Below the pieces are notes generated by a model that did no database searches, was not told the DNA's origin, and was given only the letters and a program-made list of their open reading frames with translations. Both the position numbers and the translations under genes were made by a program. From contig QPMI01000612.1 of NCBI GenBank assembly GCA_004431415.1, positions 62,001 through 126,000 on the forward strand: DNA of 64,000 nt, read 5' to 3'. The stretch comes from Cyanophora paradoxa CCMP329 (taxonomy: Eukaryota; Plantae; Glaucophyta). Below, one piece after another: positions 4,255-60,138 of the stretch. How positions within the stretch are numbered: the stretch's first letter is position 1; every line of letters starts with the position of its first letter.

Positions 4255-7200
4255 CTAGGCGAGGCGGGCGGCGAGGGCGTCGCGCTCGGCCGTGACGGCC
4301 GCGAGCTGCTCCTCCAGGGCCTTCTTCTTCGCCTGCACCGAGGCCGCCGCCGCCTGCCCCCGCCCATCAGGCCCCCCGCGCAGCGAATAAGAGCAGCAGG
4401 GCAGGGACGGGGCACGGGCCTTGAATTTGGTGAGGAGCTCCTCCTTGTCCGCCTTGGCCGCCGCCAGCGCCGCCTCCAGCTCCGCCACGCGCGGATCGTC
4501 CACAGCGGGCGCCGCCGGGGCCGCCGCCGCTGCCGCCGCCGCCACGCGGGCCTCAGCCGCCTCGAGCTCTGCCTGAAGGCGAGCGACCTTCTCGAGGGCA
4601 GCCGCCGCCTGCGGGGCGCGGGCTCGGACACTGCTGGTCGGAACAGGGCGGGCGGGGAAGGCGAGCGCGCCTTGGCGGCCTCCGCGGCGTGGGAGTCGCG
4701 GAGGGCGTCCAGCTCGCAGCGCAGGCCGGCTGCCCGCGCCGCCGCCTCCTCCGCCCCCGCGCCCGCCGCCGCCGCCTTCTCCTCCGCCGCCCGCGCCCGC
4801 TCGCCGGCCTTGGGGGAGGTGAGTGAGCGGGGCGGCGGGGCGGGGGCGGGGCGAGAAGCGGCGCACGGCGGCGAGGGCGGCGCGGAGGGAGTCGGCCTCG
4901 GCGCGGACGGCCTCGGCCTCGGCGGCGGGGCCGGCGGCGCCAGCGCGGGCGGCGTCGAGCTCGGCCTGGAGGGCGGCCTGCGCGTCGGCGGCGGCCTGCA
5001 GGCGGGCCTTCATCGCGGCGGCCGCCTGCCTCAGCTTCTCCCCGAGGGCCTCCTTCTCCGCCTCCAGCGCCCCGGCGCGCGCCGCCTGCGCCTCGAGCGC
5101 CGCGCGCGCCTCCTCGAGCTGCCCGCGCGCCTCCGCCGCGCCCCGCGCCGCCTCGTCCGCCTCCGCCGCGTGCGCCGCCCGAAGCGCCGCCTCCTTCTCC
5201 AGCCCCGCCGCCTGCCGCGCGCCGCCGCCGCCGTCGGCGAGCGGACAGACGGGGGCGGGGGCGTGGGAGGGGCGGTGCGGACGCGCTGCTCGGCGGCGGA
5301 GAGGGCGGCGGCGAGGGAGCGGAGCTCGGCCTCGTGGGCGGCCCGCATGCCGCCGATCTGCTCGTAGAGCTCGGCGACCTTCGCGGCGCCCTCCGTCACC
5401 TGCGCAGACAGCGCCGCCCTCTCCGCCTCCAGCGCCGCCGCCCGCTCCGCCGCGTCGGCCGCCTCCCCGCCCCGGCCCGCCTCGCCGCCTCGAGCTCGGC
5501 CCGCAGCGAGTCGGCCTCGGCGCGGAGCGCGCCCGTCTCGGCGGCCGCCGCGGCGAGCTGCGCCTGCAGCCGCTCGGCCAGGCGCGCGCTCGCCTGCGCG
5601 ATCGCCTCGCCGCGCGCGTTGACCTGCGGGGCAGCCGGTCAGCGCCGGAGGGGCGGCGGGGGCGGGGCGGGGGAGGGGCGCGCGTGGGCGGAGAGCTCGC
5701 GGAGGGCCTCCTCGCGCGCCGCGAGGGCCGCCTCGAGCTCCGCCACGCGCCCGCCGGCGCCGCCCTCCCCGCCCGCTCCGCCTCCAGCCCCGCCACCTTC
5801 TCCGAGAGCTCCCCGAGGGCCCTCCGCAGCTCCTCCGCCTCCGCCTGCGCCCCCTGCAGCGCCCCCGCCGCCGCCTCCGCCTTCGCCTCCACCGCCGCCG
5901 CCTCCGCGCCCCGCGAAACCAGCGCGGCCTCGAGCAGCGCCACCTGGCCCCGCAGGCCCTCCGCCGCTGCGCACGCCTCCTCGCGCGCCGCCTCCGCCTG
6001 CGCGAGCTGCTCCGAGAGGCGGGCGAGCTCGGCGCCCTCGGCGCCGGCGGCCTCGCGGCTGGCGGCGGCCTCCTCCGCGCGCGCCTCCGCCGCCGCCTCG
6101 AGCGCCGCGACGCGCTCCCGCGCCTCCCCGAGCTGCGCCAGCGCCTCGCCCTGCCGCTTCCGCGCCGCCTCCGCCGCCTCCTCCAGCTCCGCCTTGTCCG
6201 CCTCGAGCTGCGCCACGAGCTCCGAGAGGCGCCCGAGCTCGGCCGACTCGGCGCCGGCCGCCTCGCGCGACGCCGCCTGCTCCTCCTCCCGCGCCTCCGC
6301 CACGGCCTCCAGCGCCGCAATGCGCTCTTGGGCCTGGCCGAAGCGCGCCGCCGCCTCGTGGGCCTGCCTCTTGAAGCCCTCGGCGGCCTCCTCGAGCTCG
6401 GTCTTGTCCATCTCGAGCTGCGCCACGAGCTCCGAGAGGCGCCCGACCTCGGCCGCCGCCTCCGCCCCGGAGGAGGCGCCGGCGCCCCGCTCCTCGAGGG
6501 CGGCCTCGAGCTGGGCGGCGCGCTCCTGGGCGGCGCCGAGGCGGGCGAGGAGGTCCGCGTGCTGCTCCTCGAGGGCGCGGGCGGCCGCCTCGGCCTGCCC
6601 GCGGGCCACCTCCGCGAGCGCCACGCGCTCCGTCAGCTGCGCCACCCGCTCCACGTCCTCCCCGGCCGCCCCCGACGCCCGCAGCTCCTCCAGCCTCTCC
6701 ACCGCCGCGTCCCTCTCCGCCGCCGCCGCCGCCGCGCGCGCCTCCGCCTCCTGCAGCTCCGCCGCCATCGCCTCCAACTGCACAGGCCGTCGGCGGGGCG
6801 CGCGGAAGGGCCCCGAGCAGCGCGCGCGCACCGCCGCCGTGTCGGCCGCGGGGGCCGGGGCGGGCTCGCCCCAACCCGACGCCTCCTCAACCTCCTTCTC
6901 CAGCTCGGCAACCTGCCGCGCGGCTCAGCGGCGCGGACGAGCCGGGCGGAGGCGCTGGGTGCGCCTTCTTCTCGGCAGCGGCGAGCTTCTTCTCGACCTC
7001 GGCTTTCGCCGCCTCCGCCTGCGCCAGACGGTCCGAGAGGCGCCCGAGCTCGGCCGACTCGGCGCCGGCCGCCTCGCGCGACGCCGCCTGCTCCTCCTCC
7101 CGCGCCTCCGCCACGGCCTCCAGCGCCGCAATGCGCTCTTGGGCCTGGCCGAAGCGCGCCGCCGCCTCGTGGGCCTGCCTCTTGAAGCCCTCGGCGGCCT

Positions 7201-10191
7201 CCTCGAGCTCGGTCTTGTCCATCTCGAGCTGCGCCACGAGCTCCGAGAGGCGCCCCACCTCGGCCGCCGCCTCCGCCCCGGAGGAGGCGCCGGCGCCCCG
7301 CTCCTCGAGGGCGGCCTCGAGCTGGGCGGCGCGCTCCTGGGCGGCGCCGAGGCGGGCGAGGAGGTCCGCGTGCTGCTCCTCGAGGGCGCGGGCGGCCGCC
7401 TCGGCCTGCCCGCGGGCCACCTCCGCGAGCGCCACGCGCTCCGTCAGCTGCGCCACCCGCTCCACGTCCTCCCGGCCGCCCCCGACGCCCGCAGCTCCTC
7501 CAGCCTCTCCACCGCCGCGTCCCTCTCCGCCGCCGCCGCCGCCGCGCGCGCCTCCGCCTCCTGCAGCTCCGCCGCCATCGCCTCCAACTGCACAGGCCGT
7601 CGGCGGGGCGCGCGGAAGGGCCCGAGCAGCGCGCGCGCACCGCCGCCGTGTCGGCCGCGGGGGCCGGGGCGGCCGTGGCGCGCGCGTGGTCGAGCTCCTG
7701 CTCGAGCTGCGCGGCCCGGTCGCTCGCGGCCTCGAGGCGCTCGAGAAGCGAGCGCTTGTCCGCCCCCGCCGCCTCCACCTCCTCCTCCAGCGCCCGCTTC
7801 TGGTCCTCTAGAAGTGCCACCTGTCGCCCCGCTCGCCCGGCGCGCGGAGGGAGTGCGGGCAGGCGCGCCTGCTCAGAGAGGCGGGCGAGTTCGGAGCCCT
7901 CGGCGCCGGTCTTCTCGGCGGCCGCCCGCACGGCCTCGTCGGCAACGATCAAGGCGGCCTCGACCTGCGCCGCCCGCTCCTCGGCCGCCCCGACCCGCGC
8001 CGCCGCCGCGCCGGCCTCCCGCTTTGCCTGCTCCGCCTCCTCCTCCGCCGCCCGCTTCTCCTCCTCGAGCCGCGCCACGAGCTCCGAGAGGCGGGCGAGC
8101 TCGGCGCCCTCGGCGCCGGCGGCCTCGCGGCTGGCGGCGGCCTCCTCCGCGCGCGCCTCCGCCGCCGCCTCGAGCGCCGCGACGCGCTCCCGCGCCTCCC
8201 CGAGCTGCGCCAGCGCCTCGCCCTGCCGCTTCCGCGCCGCCTCCTCCGCCTCCTCCAGCTCCGCCTTGTCCGCCTCGAGCTGCGCCACGAGCTCCGAGAG
8301 GCGCCCGAGCTCGGCCGACTCGGCGCCGGCCGCCTCGCGCGACGCCGCCTGCTCCTCCTCCCGCGCCTCCGCCACGGCCTCCAGCGCCGCAATGCGCTCT
8401 TGGGCCTGGCCGAAGCGCGCCGCCGCCTCGTGGGCCTGCCTCTTGAAGCCCTCGGCGGCCTCCTCGAGCTCGGTCTTGTCCATCTCGAGCTGCGCCACGA
8501 GCTCCGAGAGGCGCCCGACCTCGGCCGCCGCCTCCGCCCCGGAGGAGGCGCCGGCGCCCCGCTCCTCGAGGGCGGCCTCGAGCTGGGCGGCGCGCTCCTG
8601 GGCGGCGCCGAGGCGGGCGAGGAGGTCCGCGTGCTGCTCCTCGAGGGCGCGGGCGGCCGCCTCGGCCTGCCCGCGGGCCACCTCCGCGAGCGCCACGCGC
8701 TCCGTCAGCTGCGCCACGCGCTCCACGTCCTCCCCGGCCGCCCCCGACGCCCGCAGCTCCTCCAGCCTCTCCACCGCCGCGTCCCTCTCCGCCGCGACGG
8801 CCCGCACCTGCGCCGGCGGCGTCATGGTCGCCCCGGGGGCCGGGGCCGCGCTCGGGGCGCCTTGGCCTCGAACTTGGCGGTGAGGGAGTCGAGGAGGGGG
8901 TCGGGCGCCTGCTCCGCCGCCGCCTCGAGCCGCCCCTCCAGCTCCCGCACCCGCTCCCGCAGCGCCCCCGCCTCCGCCTTCAGCGCCTCCGCCGCCTCCT
9001 CCGCCCCGGCCGCCCCACCCGAGGCCGCCGCCCCCCGGCCGGCCTCCTCGAGCTGCCCGCCCAGCTCCTCCACCTGCGCCTGCAGCGATGCGGCCTGCTC
9101 GGGCGCGTGAGCCCCGGCGGGTCGCGACGCCATCCGGGCGCCGCGCGCACCTCGGCCGCCTTGGCCTCGGCCCTGGAGCGCTCCTGCGCGCCCCGGCCCT
9201 CCGCCTCGGCGAGCTTGACAGCCGTCCCGTCCAGCTCCGCGCGCAGCGCCGCGAGCTTCTTCTCGTGCTCCGCCGCTGCCGCCTGCTGCTCCGCCGCGCC
9301 CTGCGACGCCGCCTCCAGCTCCGCGGCCTGCGCGGGGGTGACCGGCGGTGCGGCGGCGCGGCGCGGCGCGAGGGGCGCACGCGCTGCTTGGCGGCGGCGG
9401 CGGCGGCGCGCTCGGCGTCGAGGGTGGCCTGGGTGTCGCGGAGGCGCGCCTGGAGCGCCGACATCGTCTCGGCGAAGGCGGCCGAGTCGGCCTCAGCCCT
9501 CTTCCGCGCCTCCTCGACCTCGGCGGCGGCGCCCCCGGTCGCCGACTCGAGCTCCTGCACCCGCTTCTCCAGCGCGTTCCTCTCCTCCTTCAGCCCCGTG
9601 AACTTCTGGGCGGCCACGCTCTTGAAGTGCTGCAGCTGCGCCTCCACGTCCGCCGCGCGCTTCTCCGCCTGCTCCAGCTTCGCCTGCAGCTCCGAGTCAC
9701 CGCCCGCTGCAAGGCTCGGAGGCGCGGCCGTCGCCGCTTTGGCGAGTTCCTCCCGTAACATCTTGATAATCTCGTCTTTCTGCTGGAGTTCGAACGCATG
9801 CTCTCGTTTGATCGCATCTAGAGGGTCTCCGCGCGACTGCGACGATATGGCAGCTGAGCCTCTTAGGCTGACGGGCGGGGCGGGAACGTCGCACGGCAGA
9901 TGCATCGACCGCGACGGCCGGTGACCCTGGCGGCAGCGCAGCTGGCGCTCTGCCATCCGGAGTGGCCTGACCTGCCGACTGCTGGCCGGCGATCTGTCGG
10001 AGGGACCGTCAGCACCGAAGCGGACGATGCAGGCCCATGAATGTTCAAGACAGTCGGAGTGCGCGCGGGCTCTCTAAACCAGAGCGATCGGACCGCATCT
10101 AGCACCGAGAACGGACCGCATTTTCGGCGTTCTGCGCGACTTGCACTGCGTGGGACACCGCGTTGGCCGCCTTGCTCAGGAGCCAGCTCAT
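4255..10191 (-). CDS. Large Ala/Glu-rich coiled-coil protein, golgin-like
   Basis: Starts MSWLLSKAANAVSHAVQ, resembling the MSW[FL] N-termini of golgin-84/TMF-type golgins. Long heptad-rich exons. Stop at 4255. Confidence 0.7.
6010..8795. repeat. Three near-identical intragenic duplications (about 6010-6860, 7032-7670, 8083-8795)
   Basis: Near-identical DNA encoding RDAAVERLEELRASG...GAESAELGRLS. Two copies include the same intron. Confidence 0.9.
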
Positions 10192-32370: not shown

Positions 32371-33297
32371 CCCCGCCCCCGGCCGCTCCGAGGCCCGCTT
32401 CCGAGTTCGCTAGCTGAAATCGACATTGCTAAATTCGACAATTGAAAGCTATATATTGCTACCACAAATCACGCTCATGATCACGGTCAGACGATCTCCG
32501 GTCCCTACGTACATACCGTAGTACGTATACCGTAGTATTGTAACATGAACAAGGACTGAAAGAAATGCCGGATGCACTACTACTGCAAGTAACTTAGTAC
32601 AGTAACGAGTTCAACGATTTGCATTAGCACATCCATACAACAATGAAGTCGTAACGTCGACCATACCCTCACTGAAAACAGTATCCAGGAAGAGAATATG
32701 AGGACTCTCGCGTGCTGTGCCTAAACACTACTACTGCATTTCTACTTTTCCTGTGACGTCTACTTTGCTGCATTTCTAAGTCCTACGGAAGCCTAATTAT
32801 ATTTCCGAAGATCCTAATCCCTGCTGGCAATGCCCTATAGCTACTCCATCCTCGTAGCATGCCGCAAATAGATAAAGAAAAGGTGTGAAAGAGAAAGGTT
32901 GCTGGCCAGCCCCTGTATAGTGGGCTACTGGCTCCCGCTCCACTGTTTGCGTCCTCCTCGTGTTGTTGTCCCCGCCGTGCCCCCCAAGCCCCCCCCAGAA
33001 AGCACCCCCTCTCAACGTTTAACGTGGTCTGGTCCTTGCTGTCCCCACGCCCCATGCATACTCTTAGTACAGTAACGAGAGTCACTGAGTGTACATGTAC
33101 TTCGCTGTGATCCGATGATCTGCCCTAATCGATTTCGGACTGTCCGAAGTTTTCGTTCTGCGCGTCGGAACAGAGGCAGAAAACTTTTTCTGCTCTCCGT
33201 TCCGTCCGCCAGAACGGACCCCCCCTTCCACCTGTGCATGTTCAAAAATCAATCATTGAATGCAACGTTAACAAGCACTGATGGTCATGACCATGAG

Positions 33298-33867
33298 CTA
33301 GCAGCTGCAGCCGTGGCTCAAGAAGCGCGCCTCTTCCGCCTCCTTCGCGTTGCGGAAGCGCCGAATGCCCTCCCGGAAGGGCTCGTGGGGGTTGAAATCG
33401 ACCCGGAGGGCGTCGCAAGTCGCCGCATGGTGGCACGAACCACCGCGCGTGACGTAGCGGCCCTTGTAGTCCCTCGAGTACGGCTCTTTGACGCGGGGGG
33501 TGCCCTTGTGAACGGGCAACTTGATGTCCGACGCCTCTCCGGCTTTGCAGCCGAGGCATGCTTCGAAATCGGCGCGGCGCGCGTCCCGCAGGCTGGCGAA
33601 GCGCCACAGGCCCTCCCGCAGCGGCCGGTCTACGTCGCCGTTGACGTGCAGGGCGTAGCAGCCCGCGCGGTGGTACTTCTCCCCAATGTCGCCGGTCACG
33701 TACCGCCCCACCACGTCGTCTGGTACGGTCGTAATATTGACGACAGGCTCCCCCCCGTGCTCCTGCGCCCGGGACGCTTTTATGTTCAACGGTTGGCAAA
33801 ATTCGAAAGCGGCCAATGCGCCGACTAGATTGAGACCTATAGCTGGGGTAGTGCCAATTGAAATCAT
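33298..33867 (-). CDS. Intronless ORF with two Ada-type metal-binding-like repeats; 3' part of a decayed gene
   Basis: GRYVT-x5-KYHRAGC...RFASLRDARRADFEACLGC and GRYVTRGGSCHHAATC...RFRNAKEAEEARFLSHGCSC. Confidence 0.55.
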   Translation of the reverse strand: MISIGTTPAIGLNLVGALAAFEFCQPLNIKASRAQEHGGEPVVNITTVPDDVVGRYVTGDIGEKYHRAGCYALHVNGDVDRPLREGLWRFASLRDARRADFEACLGCKAGEASDIKLPVHKGTPRVKEPYSRDYKGRYVTRGGSCHHAATCDALRVDFNPHEPFREGIRRFRNAKEAEEARFLSHGCSC

Positions 33868-34550
33868 CTAATCGTAACGCACCTGGATAATGCAGTTTCT
33901 GATGTCAGCGGCGCTAAGCGGGCTTCCTGTACACAGAAAGCATTAATAAAGGATGCGGAACGGCAGCTGCCACACGACTTCGGGGAACGCACGAGGAGGC
34001 GTGCTCGCAGCCTGAGTTGGCGGCGCCGGCAGGCTCGGAGGGAGAGCGATGGATATGTTCGGGACCAGCTGCGGCTTCGCATTTGACGGCTCCGGCTGCA
34101 GCTGCGCATAACACGCGCACGGAGGCGACCTCGGGACCTCGAGATCTTCGCCGGGCTCGCGCTTCACTGTATGCGCAGCTGAGCGTGCTCGAGCTCGAGC
34201 TCCCAGCTCGACTTCGTCGGGCTCGCGCTTTACGTTTACCGCAGCTGCAGCTGCAGCTGCGCGCGGCGCGTTCAAGGACCCGAGATTTAATATTCCGGCC
34301 GCTGGAGCACGCACGTGCAGGCGGCAGATGCAGGTCCGCGGTCGGTCGCGATGCATATGTAAACGTCGTCTCGAGCTCGAGCTCGACGACTGCTTCTGCA
34401 GCTGCAGCTGCAGGCGGCGCCGGCTGCAGAGGCGCTTCATCGACGACGCGCTCGAGTTTTACTACTGCTTCCAGGCGCGGGCCAAGGTTGCGGCAAACAC
34501 GTCGCTGCACGCGGGTTAGGCGCGCGCCTTAAGCTTAAAGCTTTTTTAAG
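33667..34550. repeat. 884-bp direct repeat, copy A (putative giant target-site duplication)
   Basis: Identical by eye to 37308-38191 (offset 3641). Confidence 0.95.
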
Positions 34551-37307
34551 TTTTTTTTTTTTTTCAGTAATCCCTAGTGTATTAGGGGACTGGTGCCCCA
34601 AGTTGACAAACAGCTAATGCTATCTGCCTACCCTAGGCCTAAGCCTACAAACACACGACAAGTCTAGCTTACCTCCCCCCTATTGGGTCTCCAGCTAGAC
34701 TAACCCCGAGGGAATCTCCCTACTGCGAGCCCTACCCCCTAAGGCCACTCTTGCGGCCCTCGGTGGGGCCTCCCCCAGCGGCCGCGCGAGCGCGGCCATT
34801 GGGGGGGTGGGGTTGGGGGTGGGGAGCTGGGGCCGGAGAGTTTATTGGGGCAGGGCCCCGGAGGATTTATTGCGCACCGCCTCTGCGGTGCGAGCGCCGC
34901 CGGGCGCGGGGCCCCCGGGGGAGGGGTTGGGGCCCCCCATCCGGCGGCGGGTCCCGCCCTGCAGGCTGCCAGCGGCGTGGCAGCCTGCACCTGCGCGGGC
35001 GGGACCGGACCTGGCGCGGGCAGGCAGGCCACGCCCGAGGGGCCTGCTCTCCTCCAGGAGTGGGCCTCTCAAGCGCGAGCGTGGCGTCAGCCCGGCGCGC
35101 GCGGGCAGGGAGTGCACACTTTGGGCTCAGGGTCTGTAGCCCAGCGGGGAGAGGCCGAAGATGAGGAGGGACTGGATGAGGTCGCCGCGGTGGAGCAGGG
35201 GGTGGTACCTTGGGGGCAGAGAAGGGGTACGGGGCTCGGTGGAGGCGGCGGTGACGGCCCAGGGGGTGTAGGCAGAGGGGACATCGGTCTGGGGCGGGAG
35301 TGCCTCGGGGTGGAGCTGGCGCGCGCGGGCGGAAAACTCGAATGGGGGCGGTGGTGCGGGGACCGAGGGCGGTGCCGGCGGTGGTGGGGGGGCCCGGCGG
35401 CGGGGGGCGCGGGGCTGGCGGGGCGGGGGCCGGTCTTGCGGTTCGACGGGTGACGGCGGTGTGGGGGGGTCAGAGAGGCTCGCCGAGGCGGGGGAGTCCG
35501 GGGGGGGGCGGTCCTGTGGATCAGGGGCTGGGACAGCCGGACCTGCACGTCGGGCTCCGCGGTCTCCACGTGCAAGAAGATTGTTGCGGGCGGAGGTGAA
35601 GCCGGCCGAGTCACGGAGGGCGGCCAGCTCACGCTCGCGGCGCGTGAGGCGGCGGGGTAGCGGGGCTGGGCTGCGGGGAGGGGAGGAGGCTGGGGGTGTG
35701 GGGGGAGGGGCTGGGGGGAAGGGGGGGGAGACGGGCCGGGGACGGTGGAGGGCCGGTCGGGCGGGCGAGGGGAGGGGGCCGGGGTGGCGGAGGGTCCGCT
35801 GGGGCGGGGGCGGCGGGGAGTCCGGAGGGGGAGGGGGCAGTTGCGAGTCGGGCCGGGGGAACGGGGGAGAGACCGACCGCGGACCGGAAGTAGGATTGGA
35901 GGGGGCGCATCGCCACGGTCGTCCCTCTGCCGCGACCTTTGCCGCGGCCCTTGCCGGGTCGAGCTGTGCCGGCACCTAGTCGGGAGGAAGGGCCTGTCGC
36001 CTCCGGTCGGCCTGTCGGAGGTGGGCGAGGCGAGGCGGGGGGCGGGGCGGGGCGTGGGGGGCGGGGGGTCCGGGGCTCGCGGCGGCGGGGTGGAGCCGGA
36101 GCCGGAGGGGGCTGGGGCGGACCTCTGGGGCCGGGTCCGGGTGCTGGGGGCCGTTGGCTTGTGGCTAGGATTCGGGTGAGGATGAGGCTGTGCCAGTGGG
36201 CGCAGCACCGGCTGCTGCCATCGAAGGGCGAGTTGGGGTCCGTGAGCGCGTCTTCTTGGCCCCGGACCAGGGCGTCTGCCAGGGCACAGACAATTACACC
36301 GCAGCTGAAGCGGTCCCGTTGTTCGGGGATGGGGTACCTGGTGGCCGATGCAAGCGGCCAGGCGGTGGGGTCGTCTGAGGGAAGGTTGCGTTCCCGGCGC
36401 TCGAGCTGGAGCCAGCGGAGAATCGGGGCCAGCTTCTCTCGAGCCGACTCTGCGTTTGGCAGGTTGTAGGCATCATAGAGTTCGGCTCGACGGTCACGTA
36501 CGTGGATCGCAGCGAAGGTCCAGTGGCCCGGTGAGTGGATCGGGAAGAGCAGAACATCGAAGTCGAACGGGCTGACCCCGCGGGCTACCAGCTTGTTGTG
36601 AAGGCGCTGGGGCCTCGGCCTGGCGCGGAGAGGTTAGGGTACTCAAGCGAGTCAAAGATTAGTGGACGGCGGGCCAGGGCAGGGAGTTGGGCGAGGAGGG
36701 CGAGGTAGAAGACAACGGTCTCGTCGTCTAACCAGGTCTCACCATTGAGCCGACTGAGAGATCTCCTCGTGACGTTGATGCTGCCCGAGGTACCGAGCAG
36801 CGGCGAGGAGATCTGTCGGAGTACTTCCTGCGCAGGCTTTAGCGGGCCGGGTCGGGTCTGTGCCCACGCTAGGCGGACCTCTTCGGACGGCGGCAGGGGG
36901 GGCCACGGGCTGGGCTGCGGGCGGGTCGGGGCCGCGGGCAAGGGTGAGTGCCGGGGCTCCGGCGGGTGAGGCGCTGGGGGGCTCAGGGGGGGTGGAGGGT
37001 TAAGCTGGGGGGCTGAGCTCACGGGAGGGGCGTCCGATCGCGAGGTTGCTTTGGGGTTCGTGGGCGGGCTGTGCGGGCTGTCTGCGGCGACATTCATCAG
37101 GTCATGGGCGTCGGGCGGGGAGGGCGGGCAAGCTGGACGGTCTGTGCTCGACCGGCCTACTGCTGAGTGCGCATCGCGCGCTGGCGCTGCCGTCGGCTGG
37201 AGACGGGCGCGTTCCGGTACGCTTGGGGGTACCGGAATACTACTGACCGGCACTACGGGTGCGGGCTGCGGGTTCGGGTCCGGCTGGGGGCGTGTCTCCC
37301 GGGCGCG
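34551..37307 (-). mobile_element. 5'-truncated non-LTR-type retroelement with poly(A) tail carrying a Ulp1/C48 peptidase domain
   Basis: T14 at 34551-34564 is an A-tail on the minus strand, preceded by a CCCTA/TAGGG hairpin. Intronless. Encodes WLDDETV...FPIHSPGHW...LYDAYN...EQRDRFSCG with a frameshift near 36620. No RT in the retained part. Confidence 0.75.
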
Positions 37308-38191
37308 GCGGTGGTACTTCTCCCCAATGTCGCCGGTCACGTACCGCCCCACCACGTCGTCTGGTACGGTCGTAATATTGACGACAGGCTCCCCCCCGTG
37401 CTCCTGCGCCCGGGACGCTTTTATGTTCAACGGTTGGCAAAATTCGAAAGCGGCCAATGCGCCGACTAGATTGAGACCTATAGCTGGGGTAGTGCCAATT
37501 GAAATCATCTAATCGTAACGCACCTGGATAATGCAGTTTCTGATGTCAGCGGCGCTAAGCGGGCTTCCTGTACACAGAAAGCATTAATAAAGGATGCGGA
37601 ACGGCAGCTGCCACACGACTTCGGGGAACGCACGAGGAGGCGTGCTCGCAGCCTGAGTTGGCGGCGCCGGCAGGCTCGGAGGGAGAGCGATGGATATGTT
37701 CGGGACCAGCTGCGGCTTCGCATTTGACGGCTCCGGCTGCAGCTGCGCATAACACGCGCACGGAGGCGACCTCGGGACCTCGAGATCTTCGCCGGGCTCG
37801 CGCTTCACTGTATGCGCAGCTGAGCGTGCTCGAGCTCGAGCTCCCAGCTCGACTTCGTCGGGCTCGCGCTTTACGTTTACCGCAGCTGCAGCTGCAGCTG
37901 CGCGCGGCGCGTTCAAGGACCCGAGATTTAATATTCCGGCCGCTGGAGCACGCACGTGCAGGCGGCAGATGCAGGTCCGCGGTCGGTCGCGATGCATATG
38001 TAAACGTCGTCTCGAGCTCGAGCTCGACGACTGCTTCTGCAGCTGCAGCTGCAGGCGGCGCCGGCTGCAGAGGCGCTTCATCGACGACGCGCTCGAGTTT
38101 TACTACTGCTTCCAGGCGCGGGCCAAGGTTGCGGCAAACACGTCGCTGCACGCGGGTTAGGCGCGCGCCTTAAGCTTAAAGCTTTTTTAAG
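37308..38191. repeat. 884-bp direct repeat, copy B
   Basis: Identical by eye to 33667-34550. Confidence 0.95.
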
Positions 38192-38597
38192 CTTGCAATT
38201 AACGAGAGCGTCCGCGGCGGCGCACGCTTGAAGGTTGCTCAATCGGGCACTTTTCCTGTTCAAGGCCCCGCTTCTTCCTCGCCGCCGCGCGCGTGAGCGG
38301 AGGATCGACATTCTGAACCGCGGCCGGCGCCGATTTCTGCGCGAAACAGCGCTTGCGCGCGCCTCGAGCATCACGAGCGGGGCTTCGAGGCACTGACCGG
38401 AGATGCACTGCTCGACCCTCGTTCGTCGTTTTCCTGCTTCATGGTTCGCTGACTGTACGAGGGTCAGCTCGCACTTGAGCTTGGGGGAGGAGCGCCCCGG
38501 CGCCTCGCAATTTTTTTAATCTAAGATTTTTCTAAATAAAAATGCTAAAATACTTGTTAAGAAAATCATTACAAGTTGTGAAGGTAAAGGAATTAAC

Positions 38598-38669
38598 CCG
38601 ATACCGTGACTTGTATCCTCGTTGTGTACTACGAGTGGGCACGCCCACCGTAGATCTTTAAAAAAAAAA
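38598..38669 (+). mobile_element. About 70-nt poly(A)-tailed retro-insertion with 12-bp TSD
   Basis: AAAGGAATTAAC at 38586-38597 and 38670-38681. Stem-loop CTACG-A-GTGGGC-AC-GCCCAC-CGTAG directly before the A-tract. Confidence 0.75.
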
Positions 38670-39119
38670 AAAGGAATTAACGAATACATTATTAAATATG
38701 ATTTCCAATGCTCCCAAGATTTTGAACAAGATCCGTGCTCCTGCGGAGCACTAAGTACGGCGAAGCCTCGCGGACGCCCTCGCGGCTGTCACAGTAGGCC
38801 TATAGGGCACTGGCCAGCGGCCTGGCCGATCGCGAACAGCTTTCTGGTTGGAAGCTGGCCGGCTGACGGCCAGTCCAGCTACCGCTGGCCGGCTAGAGGA
38901 ATATAACTAGAGGAATATTAATGTACTGAGGAAATAAAGGGAGGCCGGAGCAGGTTGAGATTAGAGGAGATGAATTATATATAATATTGTTGAGAGGGAG
39001 GCCCGGGAGGGGCAAGGTTCTCGCGGCCAGGCGCATGCACAGAGCTTGCGAATCGCTTAAACAGAATCTTGAATGCATATAGCTATAGCATCGATGTGCG
39101 GGGCTGCGGAGCTCGAGGC

Positions 39120-41490
39120 GAGGGCGCGCGGAAAGATGTGCAGGTCCATGCAGGATCGAATTTTCGGGGTCGGCTGGGTCCTCGCGGCCCGTCGCATACG
39201 CAAAGCGTGCGGAAGACTTTGCCTACATCTTAAATGCTTATGCTATCGTTCCGCGCATGCGCCGCGGCGTGGGCGCGCGGAAAGATGTCAGGGCGCGTGC
39301 AGGATCGAATTTTGGCCGTCGGGTACCTTCCTGCGCTGTTCCGGCTCCGAAAAGCGGATTTCGGGGGTGCGCAGGCCCTGCTATGTCCATGCGCGCCAGT
39401 ACGCATCGATTGCGCGCGTCGCGGACCGGGCGGGACCGGCTAGCGCTGGATCAAATTTTCGGCCGACTCTTCGCACTGGAGCGTCGACGGCGCTTGAAAT
39501 CGAGCTTGCGGCGATGCGCTCGCCCTCGCGCGGCATTCTGTATCGTTCTGGGGCGTCCCTGGCGCGATTTCGTCGCGGGACCGGCGGGACCGGGTCCCAC
39601 CTTCTGACTCGGACTGCATTTGTCGGAGGTTAAGTACCGGAATTGATCCAGAGGGAAATTCGATTTTCGCGCGACGCCCACGGGCGAGCGGTCGTCTTAG
39701 GGGAGCCACGACGCTAAAAATGGATCTAGAGAGGTCTGTGGGGGTTAGGGTAGCTGAGTCATTAGCGGCAATCGCGTCCGTGTCGAGGCAGAATTAATAA
39801 TTCGTCCTCGAGGGAGTGCGACGCGGAAATTATTTAGCAGGGGGGATCTTGAGTGGAAAAAAAGGTTAAAAAAGGAATTTATCAGGTCCATGCAGGATCG
39901 AATTTTCGGGGTCGGCTGGGTCCTCGCGGCCCGTCGCATACGCAAAGCGTGCGGAAGACTTTGCCTACATCTTAAATGCTTATGCTATCGTTCCGCGCAT
40001 GCGCCGCGGCGTTCTGGGGCGAAGTTCTGGGGCGTCCCTGGCGCGATTTCGTCGCGGGACCGGGCGGGACCGGGTCCCACCTTCGGACTCGGACTGCATT
40101 TGTCGGAGGTTAAGTACCGGAATTGATCCAGAGGGAAATTCGATTTTCGCGGGATGCCTACGGGGGAGCGGTCGTCTTAGGGGAGCCAGGACGCTAAAAA
40201 TGGATCTAGAGGGGTCTGTGGGGGTTCGGGCAGCTGTGTAATGTCCATCAATCGCGTCCGTGTCGAGGCAGAATTAATAATTCTGCCTCGAGGGAGTGCG
40301 ATACGGAAATTATTTAGTAGGGGAGATCTCGAGTTGAAAAAAAGGTTAAAAAAGGAATTTCGCTCGGCGGTTTTTGGGTTGTGGGCGCGCGGAAAGATGT
40401 CAGGGCGCGTGCAGGATCGAATTTTGGCCGTCGGGTACCTTCCTGCGCTGTTCCGGCTCCGAAAAGCGGATTTCGGGGGTGCGCAGGCCCTGCTATGTCC
40501 ATGCGCGCCAGTACGCATCGATTGCGCGCGTCGCGGGACCGGGCGGGACCGGCTAGCGCTGGATCAAATTTTCGGCCGACTCTTCGCACTGGAGCGTCGA
40601 CGGCGCTTGAAATCGAGCTTGCGGCGATGCGCTCGCCCTCGCGCGGCATTCTGTATCGTTCTGGGGCGTCCCTGGCGCGATTTCGTCGCGGGACCGGGCG
40701 GGACCGGGTCCCACCTTCTGACTCGGACTGCATTTGTCGGAGGTTAAGTACCGGAATTGATCCAGAGGGAAATTCGATTTTCGCGCGACGCCCACGGGCG
40801 AGCGGTCGTCTTAGGGGAGCCACGACGCTAAAAATGGATCTAGAGAGGTCTGTGGGGGTTAGGGTAGCTGAGTCATTAGCGGCAATCGCGTCCGTGTCGA
40901 GGCAGAATTAATAATTCGTCCTCGAGGGAGTGCGACGCGGAAATTATTTAGCAGGGGGGATCTTGAGTGGAAAAAAAGGTTAAAAAAGGAATTTATCAGG
41001 TCCATGCAGGATCGAATTTTCGGGGTCGGCTGGGTCCTCGCGGCCCGTCGCATACGCAAAGCGTGCGGAAGACTTTGCCTACATCTTAAATGCTTATGCT
41101 ATCGTTCCGCGCATGCGCCGCGGCGTTCTGGGGCGAAGTTCTGGGGCGTCCCTGGCGCGATTTCGTCGCGGGACCGGGCGGGACCGGGTCCCACCTTCGG
41201 ACTCGGACTGCATTTGTCGGAGGTTAAGTACCGGAATTGATCCAGAGGGAAATTCGATTTTCGCGGGATGCCTACGGGGGAGCGGTCGTCTTAGGGGAGC
41301 CAGGACGCTAAAAATGGATCTAGAGGGGTCTGTGGGGGTTCGGGCAGCTGTGTAATGTCCATCAATCGCGTCCGTGTCGAGGCAGAATTAATAATTCTGC
41401 CTCGAGGGAGTGCGATACGGAAATTATTTAGTAGGGGAGATCTCGAGTTGAAAAAAAGGTTAAAAAAGGAATTTCGCTCGGCGGTTTTTG
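39120..41490. repeat. Higher-order tandem repeat (about 1.11-kb period; sub-blocks P-Q-R1-P-R2-Q-R1-P-R2)
   Basis: A ~335-bp block ending AAAAAAAGGTTAAAAAAGGAATTT occurs 4 times in alternating variants. The CAGGTCCATGCAGGATCG block occurs 3 times. Confidence 0.92.
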
Positions 41491-56470: not shown

Positions 56471-56710
56471 CGAGTGCTGCGAGTGCTGCGCATGCGAGTG
56501 CTGCGCATGCGCCACGATGTGCACATGCGTACCCACTGAATTTGATTCCCCTCGAGCTCAGATTCCGATTCAACAATGTTCGTGGCAGCCCCGGTCGTTC
56601 TCGCGAGAGACCACGCCTCCTCCGGGGTCTCTGCTTCAGCCAGGTGCTCGCTTCGCCGACCCGCAGGCGCTTACAAGGTCCGCCGCTCTTCTTCTAGTAC
56701 TCCGACACGC

Positions 56711-57109
56711 TGCTCCCCCCCGCCTAGTCCCGACACGGCCTAGCCACTTGACCAGAGCTCGCCTCCTGGCCCCCGCCCCCAAAGCGAGGGGGCCAGCAGC
56801 CGCCTAGCCCCGCCCGATCGTAATCGTAATCGTAATCAGGCCAGGGCTCCGGGATCCCCCCGCCTATAGCCCATCGCAATCGTAATCGTACTGATCGCAC
56901 AGACCTCTCGCAGGAGCATCTTCATCCGCTACGGCACGGGCGTGGACGCGAAGCGCCTGCTCGGCTCGTAGCTAGCCTCGGCTCCCATCCCCTTTTCTCC
57001 ATCAGGGCACCAGTCCCTGCGGGTTACGCTCTATCCCTAACAGCACGGGTATAGTTAAAGCGTTGACGGTCTAGGAGTGGTCCCGCGCGCCCGTAGCTTA
57101 GAAAGAGCA
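56711..57109. repeat. About 400-bp dispersed repeat (family B), copy 1
   Basis: Highly similar to 59746-60138. Termini TGCTC...GAGCA. Confidence 0.92.
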
Positions 57110-59696: not shown

Positions 59697-59745
59697 CGGC
59701 GCCGCGCGGTGCGTGTTGTGTCTACACACGCCTATACACAATCGC

Positions 59746-60138
59746 TGCTCCCCCCCGCCTAGTCCCGACACGGCCTAGCCACTTGACCAGAGCTCGCCTC
59801 CTAGCCCCCGCCCCCAAAGCGAGGGGGCCAGCAGCCGCCTAGCCCCGCCCGATCGTAATCGCAATCGTAATCAGGCCAGGGCTCCCCCCGCCTATAGCCC
59901 ATCGCAATCGTAATCGTGCTGATCGCACAGACCTCTCGCAGGAGCATCTTCATCCGCTACGGCACCGGCGTGGACGCGAAGCGCCTGCTCGGCTCGTAGC
60001 TAGCCTCGGCTCCCATCCCCTTTTCTCCATCAGGGCACCAGTCCCTGCGGGTTACGCTCTCACCCCGAACAGCACGGGTAAAGTTAAAGCGTTGAAGGTC
60101 TAGGAGTGGTCCCGCGCGCCCGTAGCTTAGAAAGAGCA
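59746..60138. repeat. Family B repeat, copy 2
   Basis: Direct repeat of 56711-57109. Confidence 0.92.

What the first reader, a model, noticed from the sequence alone, without database searches (positions are those of the whole stretch)
33667..38191. Poly(A) retroelement flanked by an 884-bp perfect target-site duplication
Seen: the layout is D - T14 - 2757-bp element - D. The duplication ends exactly at the tail and begins exactly at the truncated 5' end. Established: non-LTR TSDs are normally below about 30 bp. From memory, large flanking duplications have been reported for Dualen LINEs in Chlamydomonas and rarely for L1. Inference: second-strand cleavage about 0.9 kb away, making this family a generator of gene-fragment duplications. 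The identical copies imply a very recent event.
Basis: partly seen in the sequence, partly recalled or inferred. Interest (0 to 1): 0.8.

Follow-up and report, generated by a model that had tools for sequence, protein, structure and literature searches.

The report
LINE insertion with 884-bp target duplication
A 5'-truncated copy of a jumping gene (a LINE retrotransposon of the alga Cyanophora paradoxa) landed here very recently and copied about 0.9 kb of the host DNA to both sides of itself. This oddity has been documented once before, for Dualen LINEs in Chlamydomonas, and is now seen in a distant alga.

Summary
Positions 33667-34550 and 37308-38191 are 884/884 identical, with no similarity beyond either end. 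Between them lie T14 and a 2743-bp body, which is a poly(A)-tailed element on the minus strand.

The insert is the 3' part of a multicopy LINE family of Cyanophora paradoxa. EukProt gene models of the family carry APE, RT, RNase H, a CCHC-like motif and a C-terminal Ulp1/C48 protease.

Public short-read contigs show the empty site in two runs: left flank, one D, right flank, in a single contig. In two other runs the contigs break exactly at the end of D. So D is host target DNA, not part of the element, and the insertion is recent and polymorphic. The 5' junction has 4 nt of microhomology, so the duplication is 880-884 bp.

The phenomenon is already published for Dualen-4b_cRei in Chlamydomonas reinhardtii (flanking duplications, median 900 bp; PMC9977147). 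I could not show that this family has the restriction-like endonuclease that defines Dualen.

Verdict: real, and a new member of a known kind. It is moderately interesting as a second, distant lineage.

First readers of this scan also noted LINEs with identical 308-, 106- and 58-bp duplications elsewhere in this genome. I did not check those.

The parts
33667..34550 (.). D copy 1 (target-site duplication, 884 bp). It holds the first 67 codons and 683 bp of upstream sequence of the minus-strand ORF 33298-33867.
   Evidence: 100% identical to 37308-38191; present once in the empty-allele contigs of runs X2 and X19.
34551..34564 (-). Poly(A) tail of the element, seen as T14 on the + strand.
   Evidence: read directly from the sequence.
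34565..37307 (-). 5'-truncated body of the LINE (2743 bp): the C-terminal part of the ORF plus about 1.6 kb of G/C-rich 3' region.
   Evidence: tblastn of the Cyanophora family models hits only this stretch of the window; depth is 5-20 times that of the flanks and highest at the 3' end; distinct GC skew.
34565..34700 (-). Structured 3' end of the element RNA.
   Evidence: folding 34551-34700 with the tail: MFE -53.7 kcal/mol, z = -3.27, 1 of 200 shuffles folds as well.
36154..36633 (-). C-terminal half of the Ulp1/Peptidase_C48 domain. A His (HW), an Asp (YD) and a Cys (SCG) are seen by eye.
   Evidence: PF02902, E = 3.6e-10, 40.5 bits against a cutoff of 20.7; 897 hits, all of the scanned ones C48-type.
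36588..36860 (-). N-terminal half of the C48 domain, in another reading frame. The frameshift lies at the G-run near 36608.
   Evidence: model P0151 reads straight through this point; family contigs carry one more G behind 36608.
37308..37311 (.). 4-nt microhomology (GCGG) at the 5' junction, shared by the element and the start of D.
   Evidence: in all four runs the family contigs match up to 37311 and then continue with upstream ORF sequence. The reverse complement of that continuation, translated by eye, matches P0022 just upstream of the truncation point.
37308..38191 (.). D copy 2 (target-site duplication).
33298..33867 (-). Target ORF (189 aa) with weak Ada-type zinc-binding motifs. It stays intact beside D copy 1.
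   Evidence: Ada_Zn_binding, E = 0.0046, below the Pfam cutoff; feature score 0.82, a lead only.
36585..37508 (-). Chimeric ORF (307 aa): the first 67 codons of the duplicated target ORF fused in frame to the truncated LINE ORF.

Best explanation
A polyadenylated RNA of an APE-type LINE of Cyanophora paradoxa was inserted by target-primed reverse transcription. The family encodes APE, RT, RNase H, a CCHC-like motif and a C-terminal Ulp1/C48 protease. The + strand was nicked between 38191 and 38192 (empty-site numbering), in AAG^CTT just after a T6 run, and its 3' end primed cDNA synthesis on the poly(A) tail. Reverse transcription stopped, or the cDNA was joined, 2743 nt into the element. The cDNA end was joined through 4 nt of microhomology (GCGG) to a break in the other strand 880-884 bp away, at 33666/33667. 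Filling in the two 0.9-kb single-stranded stretches gave two identical copies of D. The event is recent, because the copies are identical and an empty allele still exists in other cultures or strains. As a by-product it duplicated the promoter region and first 67 codons of a host ORF and fused them in frame to the LINE's protease-coding remnant. Shown: the anatomy, the family identity, the 5' truncation, the microhomology and the empty allele. Inferred: the order of steps, and that the distant second break belongs to the insertion reaction.
For: Anatomy. Poly(A) tail and 5' truncation inside the ORF. Family identity: the models are 89-92% identical to the insert over matched stretches and come from Cyanophora paradoxa (EukProt EP00741). 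Their domains are Exo_endo_phos, RVT_1, RNase_H and Peptidase_C48. P0159 and P0022 are neighbouring models on one contig (g5529 and g5530). Multicopy with a 3' bias: table 2. Empty allele: in X2 and X19 one contig covers 33208-33666, one D, and the right flank to 38538 (X2) or 38497 (X19) (tables 5 and 8; contig ends worked out from the record coordinates). In X1 and X18 a contig ends exactly at the last base of D, and in X18 the next one starts 30 nt before that base, as expected at a graph branch created by the D-to-poly(T) junction (table 8). Published precedent with the same layout and size: Dualen-4b_cRei, median 900 bp (PMC9977147).
Against: Only assembled short-read contigs could be laid, not raw or long reads. 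The two D copies and both junctions in one molecule rest on the window assembly plus the contig break at the 3' junction. In X1 and X18 the contig is not broken at the left end of D, where a filled allele should add a branch. I attribute this to graph cleaning but cannot show it. The depth of the D-bearing contig relative to the right flank is 1.30-1.36. One copy predicts 1.0 and two copies predict 1.66, so a mixed or heterozygous state is possible. The window copy is frameshifted in the protease and differs from the majority of family contigs at several G-runs. Either its source was a defective copy or the assembly has homopolymer errors. This is a single event, so nothing shows that long duplications are typical of this family.
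Confidence: 0.8

Rival explanations
1. The TPRT start is the same, but the distant second end was not cut by the element. The cDNA instead joined a pre-existing nick, a replication intermediate, or a break on the sister chromatid 0.9 kb away. This is the model proposed for L1-mediated tandem duplications in human tumours.
For: This model is published for L1 (PMC7058536, Fig. 7b). In L1, 5'-truncated insertions show a broader range of target duplications and end-joining or microhomology signatures (PMC11702581). The junction here is 5'-truncated with 4-nt microhomology. No restriction-like endonuclease could be shown in the family.
Against: In Chlamydomonas more than half of Dualen-4b_cRei insertions carry such duplications, with a median of 900 bp. 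That argues for a property of the element rather than chance lesions, and the size here matches. Both boundaries sit at the centre of short palindromes, which random lesions would not explain. That observation is post hoc.
Confidence: 0.25
2. Two separate events: an ordinary tandem duplication of D, with a LINE cDNA captured as filler at the junction during break repair.
For: Only the formal possibility. Both copies of D are identical, so the order of events cannot be read from divergence.
Against: The poly(A) tail abuts the end of D exactly and the truncated 5' end abuts its start exactly. The only other allele seen is the fully empty one. No allele with D-D and no insert appears in the four runs. 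One event is more parsimonious, and the same layout arises de novo in Chlamydomonas mutation-accumulation lines.
Confidence: 0.05
3. Assembly artefact: the second D, or the element-to-D junction, is a misjoin of reads from different loci or haplotypes.
For: The window differs from the short-read contigs by many single-G indels in the insert (table 4), so the assembly is not error-free. No long reads were available. In X1 and X18 the contig is not broken at the left end of D.
Against: A simple insertion cannot give an element 5' end joined to the start of D, so that junction needs real reads. Contigs of two independent runs break exactly at the last base of D, while two other runs read through. 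This is what a real, polymorphic D-to-poly(T) junction predicts.
Confidence: 0.05
4. D is a terminal repeat of the element itself, as in LTR, DIRS or Penelope-like elements.
For: Direct repeats flank an internal region.
Against: D stands alone and is continuous with both flanks in the empty-allele contigs. Its depth equals that of the flanks while the internal part is 5-20 times deeper. D holds the 5' end of an unrelated ORF that continues into the left flank. The family's ORF continues beyond the truncation point in other copies.
Confidence: 0.01

Closest known systems
Dualen-4b_cRei (Dualen/RandI LINE) insertions in Chlamydomonas reinhardtii mutation-accumulation lines (Lopez-Cortegano et al. 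2023, PMC9977147)
   Same: The layout is the same: duplicated host sequence on both sides of a LINE insertion. The size class is the same: median 900 bp there, 880-884 bp here. Both are recent events. Both families encode APE, RT, RNase H and a cysteine protease.
   Different: The host is a glaucophyte, not a chlorophyte. The protease is Ulp1/C48 at the C-terminus, whereas a Josephin-like protease is reported for Chlamydomonas Dualen (PMC8557442). The restriction-like endonuclease that defines Dualen, and that those authors invoke for the long duplications, could not be shown here.
Cryptophyte Dualen-1_GCr (Lescot et al. 2016, PMC5029228)
   Same: It combines C48 peptidase, APE, RT, RNase H and a CCHC zinc finger in one LINE protein.
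   Different: There the C48 domain is listed before APE, a SET domain is present and an RLE is reported. Here C48 is C-terminal and no RLE was found. No insertion sites are described there.
R9 LINEs of bdelloid rotifers, with a 126-bp target-site duplication (Gladyshev and Arkhipova 2009, as cited in PMC9977147)
   Same: An unusually long, regular target-site duplication made by a non-LTR element.
   Different: R9 is an RLE-only, rDNA-specific element with a fixed 126-bp duplication. This case is about seven times longer and is not in rDNA.
L1-mediated tandem duplications in human cancers and cell models (PMC7058536, PMC11702581)
   Same: A 5'-truncated, poly(A)-tailed LINE copy sits at the junction of a direct duplication. 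The 5' junction shows microhomology.
   Different: Those events are rare and of highly variable size, up to megabases (22.6 Mb in the PMC7058536 example). They are attributed to pre-existing breaks or sister chromatids rather than to the element's own staggered cuts.

Membership tests
Non-LTR (LINE) retrotransposon insertion made by TPRT | 3' poly(A) tail abutting the target DNA | tested here: met
   A14 (seen as T14 at 34551-34564) directly follows the last base of D.
Non-LTR (LINE) retrotransposon insertion made by TPRT | Variable 5' truncation, with other copies continuing upstream | tested here: met
   Family contigs run on past 37311 into ORF sequence found in P0022. Depth is highest at the 3' end.
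Non-LTR (LINE) retrotransposon insertion made by TPRT | Family encodes a reverse transcriptase and an endonuclease | tested here: met
   RVT_1 in P0151 and P0159 (E about 1e-5) and Exo_endo_phos in P0159 (E = 1e-3). Both are below Pfam's gathering scores. The models are fragmented gene predictions. This truncated copy contains neither domain.
Non-LTR (LINE) retrotransposon insertion made by TPRT | Target-site duplication that is single-copy at the empty site | tested here: met
   Single contigs in X2 and X19 join 33666 to 37308 with one D (tables 5 and 8).
Dualen/RandI clade | Restriction-like (PD-(D/E)xK) endonuclease downstream of RT, RNase H and CCHC, in addition to APE | tested here: inconclusive
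   A CCHC-like motif and a PD...D stretch follow RNase H. There is no D/E-x-K, no Pfam or PDB sequence hit at E up to 10, and the AlphaFold models are unusable (pLDDT 45 and 38).
Dualen/RandI clade | APE N-terminal to RT, with RNase H after RT | tested here: met
   P0159 has APE at 39-190 and RT at 427-511. P0151 has RT at 25-109 and RNase H at 693-794.
Dualen/RandI clade | RT groups with Dualen/RandI in a phylogeny | not testable with these tools
   No reference LINE library was at hand. Word searches found only Cyanophora paralogues and one distant APE-RT-RNase H LINE.
Dualen/RandI clade | Cysteine protease domain | tested here: met
   Peptidase_C48. The type differs from the Josephin-like domain of Chlamydomonas Dualen, but C48 is reported in a cryptophyte Dualen.
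Elements with their own terminal direct repeats (LTR, DIRS, PLE) | The repeat accompanies every copy of the element | tested here: not met
   D has the depth of the flanks, the element has 5-20 times that depth, and D occurs alone at the empty site.
Peptidase C48 (Ulp1/SENP) | Profile match above the curated threshold | tested here: met
   PF02902, 40.5 bits against a cutoff of 20.7. The domain is split by a frameshift in this copy.

The most novel reading that the evidence does not exclude
Target duplications of hundreds of bp up to a kilobase are a regular product of this Cyanophora Ulp1-LINE family, and the family has no working restriction-like endonuclease. Long LINE duplications would then not depend on the dual endonucleases proposed for Chlamydomonas Dualen. 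They would instead reflect an older, shared feature of this group of APE/RNase H LINEs, or of how these algae resolve TPRT intermediates. Both breaks here fall at palindrome centres (CCGC|GCGG and AAG|CTT), which could be a clue to the nuclease involved.
Probability: 0.2. Interest if true: 0.65.

Novelty: new member of a known kind. Interest (0 to 1): 0.45.

Why it matters
Kilobase-scale target duplications by LINEs have been documented in one species and one family (Dualen-4b_cRei). A second case of the same size, in a glaucophyte that diverged from green algae near the base of the Archaeplastida, suggests the behaviour is a property of a LINE lineage or of a shared repair route. It is then less likely to be a curiosity of one strain. 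The locus also offers filled and empty alleles in public data, so the event can be dated and the family's activity tested. It shows concretely how such insertions make new gene structures: a duplicated promoter and N-terminus fused in frame to a SUMO-protease remnant. If the family truly lacks an RLE, the published 'dual endonuclease' explanation would need revising.

Tried and rejected
- Looking up family gene models P0004, P0022 and P0003 to fetch a full-length copy with its flanks: none is on record. I therefore could not collect other copies or measure their duplications.
- Three word-index protein searches and one exhaustive HMMER search: they found only Cyanophora paralogues, generic C48 proteases and one distant LINE. 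None gave a clade assignment.
- Tests for a restriction-like endonuclease: Pfam and PDB sequence searches at E up to 10, a language-model atlas search, and two AlphaFold runs (pLDDT 45 and 38). No fold search was worth running on those models, so the question stays open.
- Search of this scan's notes by sequence: blank.
- I first took the organism for Chlamydomonas, because of the GC content and the Dualen precedent. The EukProt accessions showed it to be Cyanophora paradoxa.
- I considered that the insert is a retrocopy of a host Ulp1 gene moved in trans. I rejected this because the C48 domain sits in the same gene models as RT or RNase H (P0151, P0004) and the sequence is multicopy with a 3' bias.
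Full report
**Observation.** A repeat search and a direct comparison confirm the layout. Positions 33667-34550 and 37308-38191 are identical over 884 bp. Identity falls to chance level (30% and 32% over 50 bp) immediately outside both ends. After the first copy come fourteen T (34551-34564) and then 2743 bp of G/C-rich sequence up to 37307. The insert has a strong GC skew on the + strand (+0.28 to +0.39) where the flanks have about 0. It is therefore compositionally foreign to its surroundings.

**What the insert is.** Read on the minus strand, the insert ends in A14. It encodes a Ulp1-type cysteine protease: Pfam Peptidase_C48, E = 3.6e-10, above the curated threshold. The N-terminal half of that domain lies in another frame, so this copy has a frameshift near 36608.

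An exhaustive HMMER search with the protease half gave four near-identical proteins, 89-92% identical over the matched stretches. These and further relatives are gene models of Cyanophora paradoxa (EukProt EP00741). The window is therefore very probably from this glaucophyte alga, not from Chlamydomonas.

The models are fragmented predictions, but together they show one long LINE protein:
- Exo_endo_phos (APE) and RVT_1 in P0159.
- RVT_1 and RNase_H in P0151.
- A CCHC-like motif, and the C48 domain at the C-terminus.
- P0159 and P0022 are adjacent models (g5529, g5530) on one contig.

Within the window, tblastn with these models hits only the insert.

**Reads evidence.** Only assembled contigs of public short-read runs were available. 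They show four things.

1. The insert is multicopy. Summed contig depth is about 5-20 times that of the flanks and is highest at the 3' end, as expected for a LINE family with many 5'-truncated copies.
2. In all four runs the family contigs agree with the window up to 37311 and then continue with different sequence. The reverse complement of that sequence encodes the residues that precede the truncation point in model P0022. The copy is therefore truncated inside the ORF. Four bases (GCGG, 37308-37311) are shared between the element and D, which is microhomology at the 5' junction. The duplication is thus 880-884 bp.
3. In runs X2 and X19 a single contig runs from 33208 through 33666, through one copy of D, and on into the right flank (to 38538 and 38497). 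This is the empty allele.
4. In runs X1 and X18 a contig runs from 33208 to exactly 34550, the last base of D. In X18 the next contig starts at 38162, 30 bases before the end of D. That is what a de Bruijn graph does at a branch, here D to poly(T) against D to right flank.

So the insertion is present in some cultures or strains and absent in others. D is ordinary single-copy host DNA.

**Caveats on the reads.**
- In X1 and X18 the contig is not broken at the left end of D, where the filled allele should add a second branch. Graph cleaning of a short, low-coverage, very G/C-rich path is a plausible reason, but it is not shown.
- The depth of the D-bearing contig relative to the right flank is 1.30-1.36. 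One copy predicts 1.0 and two copies predict 1.66. The filled allele may therefore be at intermediate frequency, or heterozygous.
- The window differs from the family contigs by many single-G indels and a few substitutions (tables 3 and 4). These are either real differences between copies or homopolymer errors of the assembly.
- In X19, which has the empty allele, half of the depth at 36608 lacks the extra G. Frameshifted copies therefore exist elsewhere in the genome.

**Mechanism.** The anatomy is that of target-primed reverse transcription.
- The + strand was nicked after 38191 (empty-site numbering), in AAG^CTT three bases after a T6 run.
- Its 3' end primed on the poly(A) tail.
- The cDNA was joined, with 4 nt of microhomology, to a break in the opposite strand 880-884 bp away.
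- Fill-in of the long single-stranded stretches duplicated D.

The steps are inferred. The end products are shown. Whether the distant break is made by the element or is a pre-existing nick, replication intermediate or sister-chromatid end cannot be decided from one event. The pre-existing-break model is the one proposed for L1-mediated tandem duplications (PMC7058536). A broader range of duplication lengths at 5'-truncated L1 insertions has also been reported (PMC11702581).

Both boundaries lie at the centre of perfect palindromes: CCGC|GCGG and AAG|CTT. In this window only 1.1% and 3.2% of positions have palindrome arms that long. This is a post hoc observation, and the left boundary is ambiguous by 4 nt.

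**Consequences at the locus.** D holds the first 67 codons and 683 bp of upstream sequence of a minus-strand ORF (33298-33867). That ORF has weak Ada-type zinc-binding motifs. The left copy leaves the ORF intact. The right copy fuses its start in frame to the truncated LINE ORF, giving a 307-codon chimeric ORF (36585-37508) that ends at the frameshift.

**Comparison with what is known.** In mutation-accumulation lines of Chlamydomonas reinhardtii, more than half of the de novo insertions of the LINE Dualen-4b_cRei carried duplications over 50 bp on both sides of the insertion, with a median of 900 bp. The authors interpreted these as exceptionally long target-site duplications, possibly due to the joint action of the APE and restriction-like endonucleases that define Dualen (PMC9977147).

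The present case has the same layout and size, so the phenomenon is not new. What differs is the host (a glaucophyte) and the family.
- Dualen elements of Chlamydomonas are said to carry a Josephin-like protease (PMC8557442). A cryptophyte Dualen carries C48, APE, RT, RNase H, CCHC and RLE (PMC5029228).
- The Cyanophora family has APE, RT, RNase H, a CCHC-like motif and C48.
- The segment after CCHC, where an RLE should be, gave no Pfam or PDB hit and has no D/E-x-K motif. It could not be modelled.

Membership in Dualen is therefore open. I found no paper linking Cyanophora to Dualen, RandI or non-LTR elements in the searchable library.

**Other notes of this scan.** First readers noted several LINEs with a C-terminal Ulp1 domain in this genome. 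They also noted LINE insertions with identical duplications of 308, 106 and 58 bp. I could not read those windows, so they remain leads. If they hold, long duplications are recurrent here.

**Verdict.** The feature is real. It is a very recent, polymorphic, 5'-truncated LINE insertion with an 880-884-bp target-site duplication in Cyanophora paradoxa. It is a new member of a known kind (long-duplication LINE insertions, known from Chlamydomonas Dualen). The interest is moderate. It extends the phenomenon to a distant lineage and to a family whose second endonuclease is undetected, and it provides a locus with both alleles in public data.

Noticed in passing
window 33663-33670 and 38189-38194: Both ends of the duplicated segment lie at the centre of perfect palindromes: CCGC|GCGG (arm 4) and AAG|CTT (arm 3, a HindIII-type site). 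Two more AAGCTT sites lie just upstream. Only 1.1% and 3.2% of window positions have arms that long.
   Followed up: partly
window 35161-36210 and 36608: Short-read contigs of all four runs carry extra single G's in G-runs relative to the window, at 12 or more places. One of them would restore the protease reading frame (table 4). This suggests either homopolymer under-calling in the assembly or a divergent source copy.
   Followed up: partly
window 36585-37508 (-): In-frame chimeric ORF: the N-terminus and upstream region of the duplicated host ORF fused to the LINE's Ulp1-coding remnant. Whether it is expressed is unknown.
   Followed up: partly
window 39141-41476: A complex local repeat just right of the insertion. 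Blocks of 130, 156, 162 and 300 bp recur at spacings of about 742 and 1112-1114 bp, many at 100% identity. Its nature is unknown.
   Followed up: no
window 56708-57037 and 59743-60065: Two copies of a 330-bp repeat, 97-100% identical and about 3.03 kb apart.
   Followed up: no
window 5050-9029: A dense array of imperfect 105/210-bp-spaced repeats, with 118- and 300-nt units at 60-100% identity. It lies in the region another reader described as E2-like genes.
   Followed up: no
window 32500-33000 and 38500-39000: Two low-GC islands (0.48 and 0.45) in a window of 0.67 GC bracket the locus.
   Followed up: no
window 34551-34700 (-): The last 150 nt of the element RNA, tail included, fold more stably than shuffles (z = -3.27, 1 of 200). 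This could be a 3' recognition structure.
   Followed up: partly
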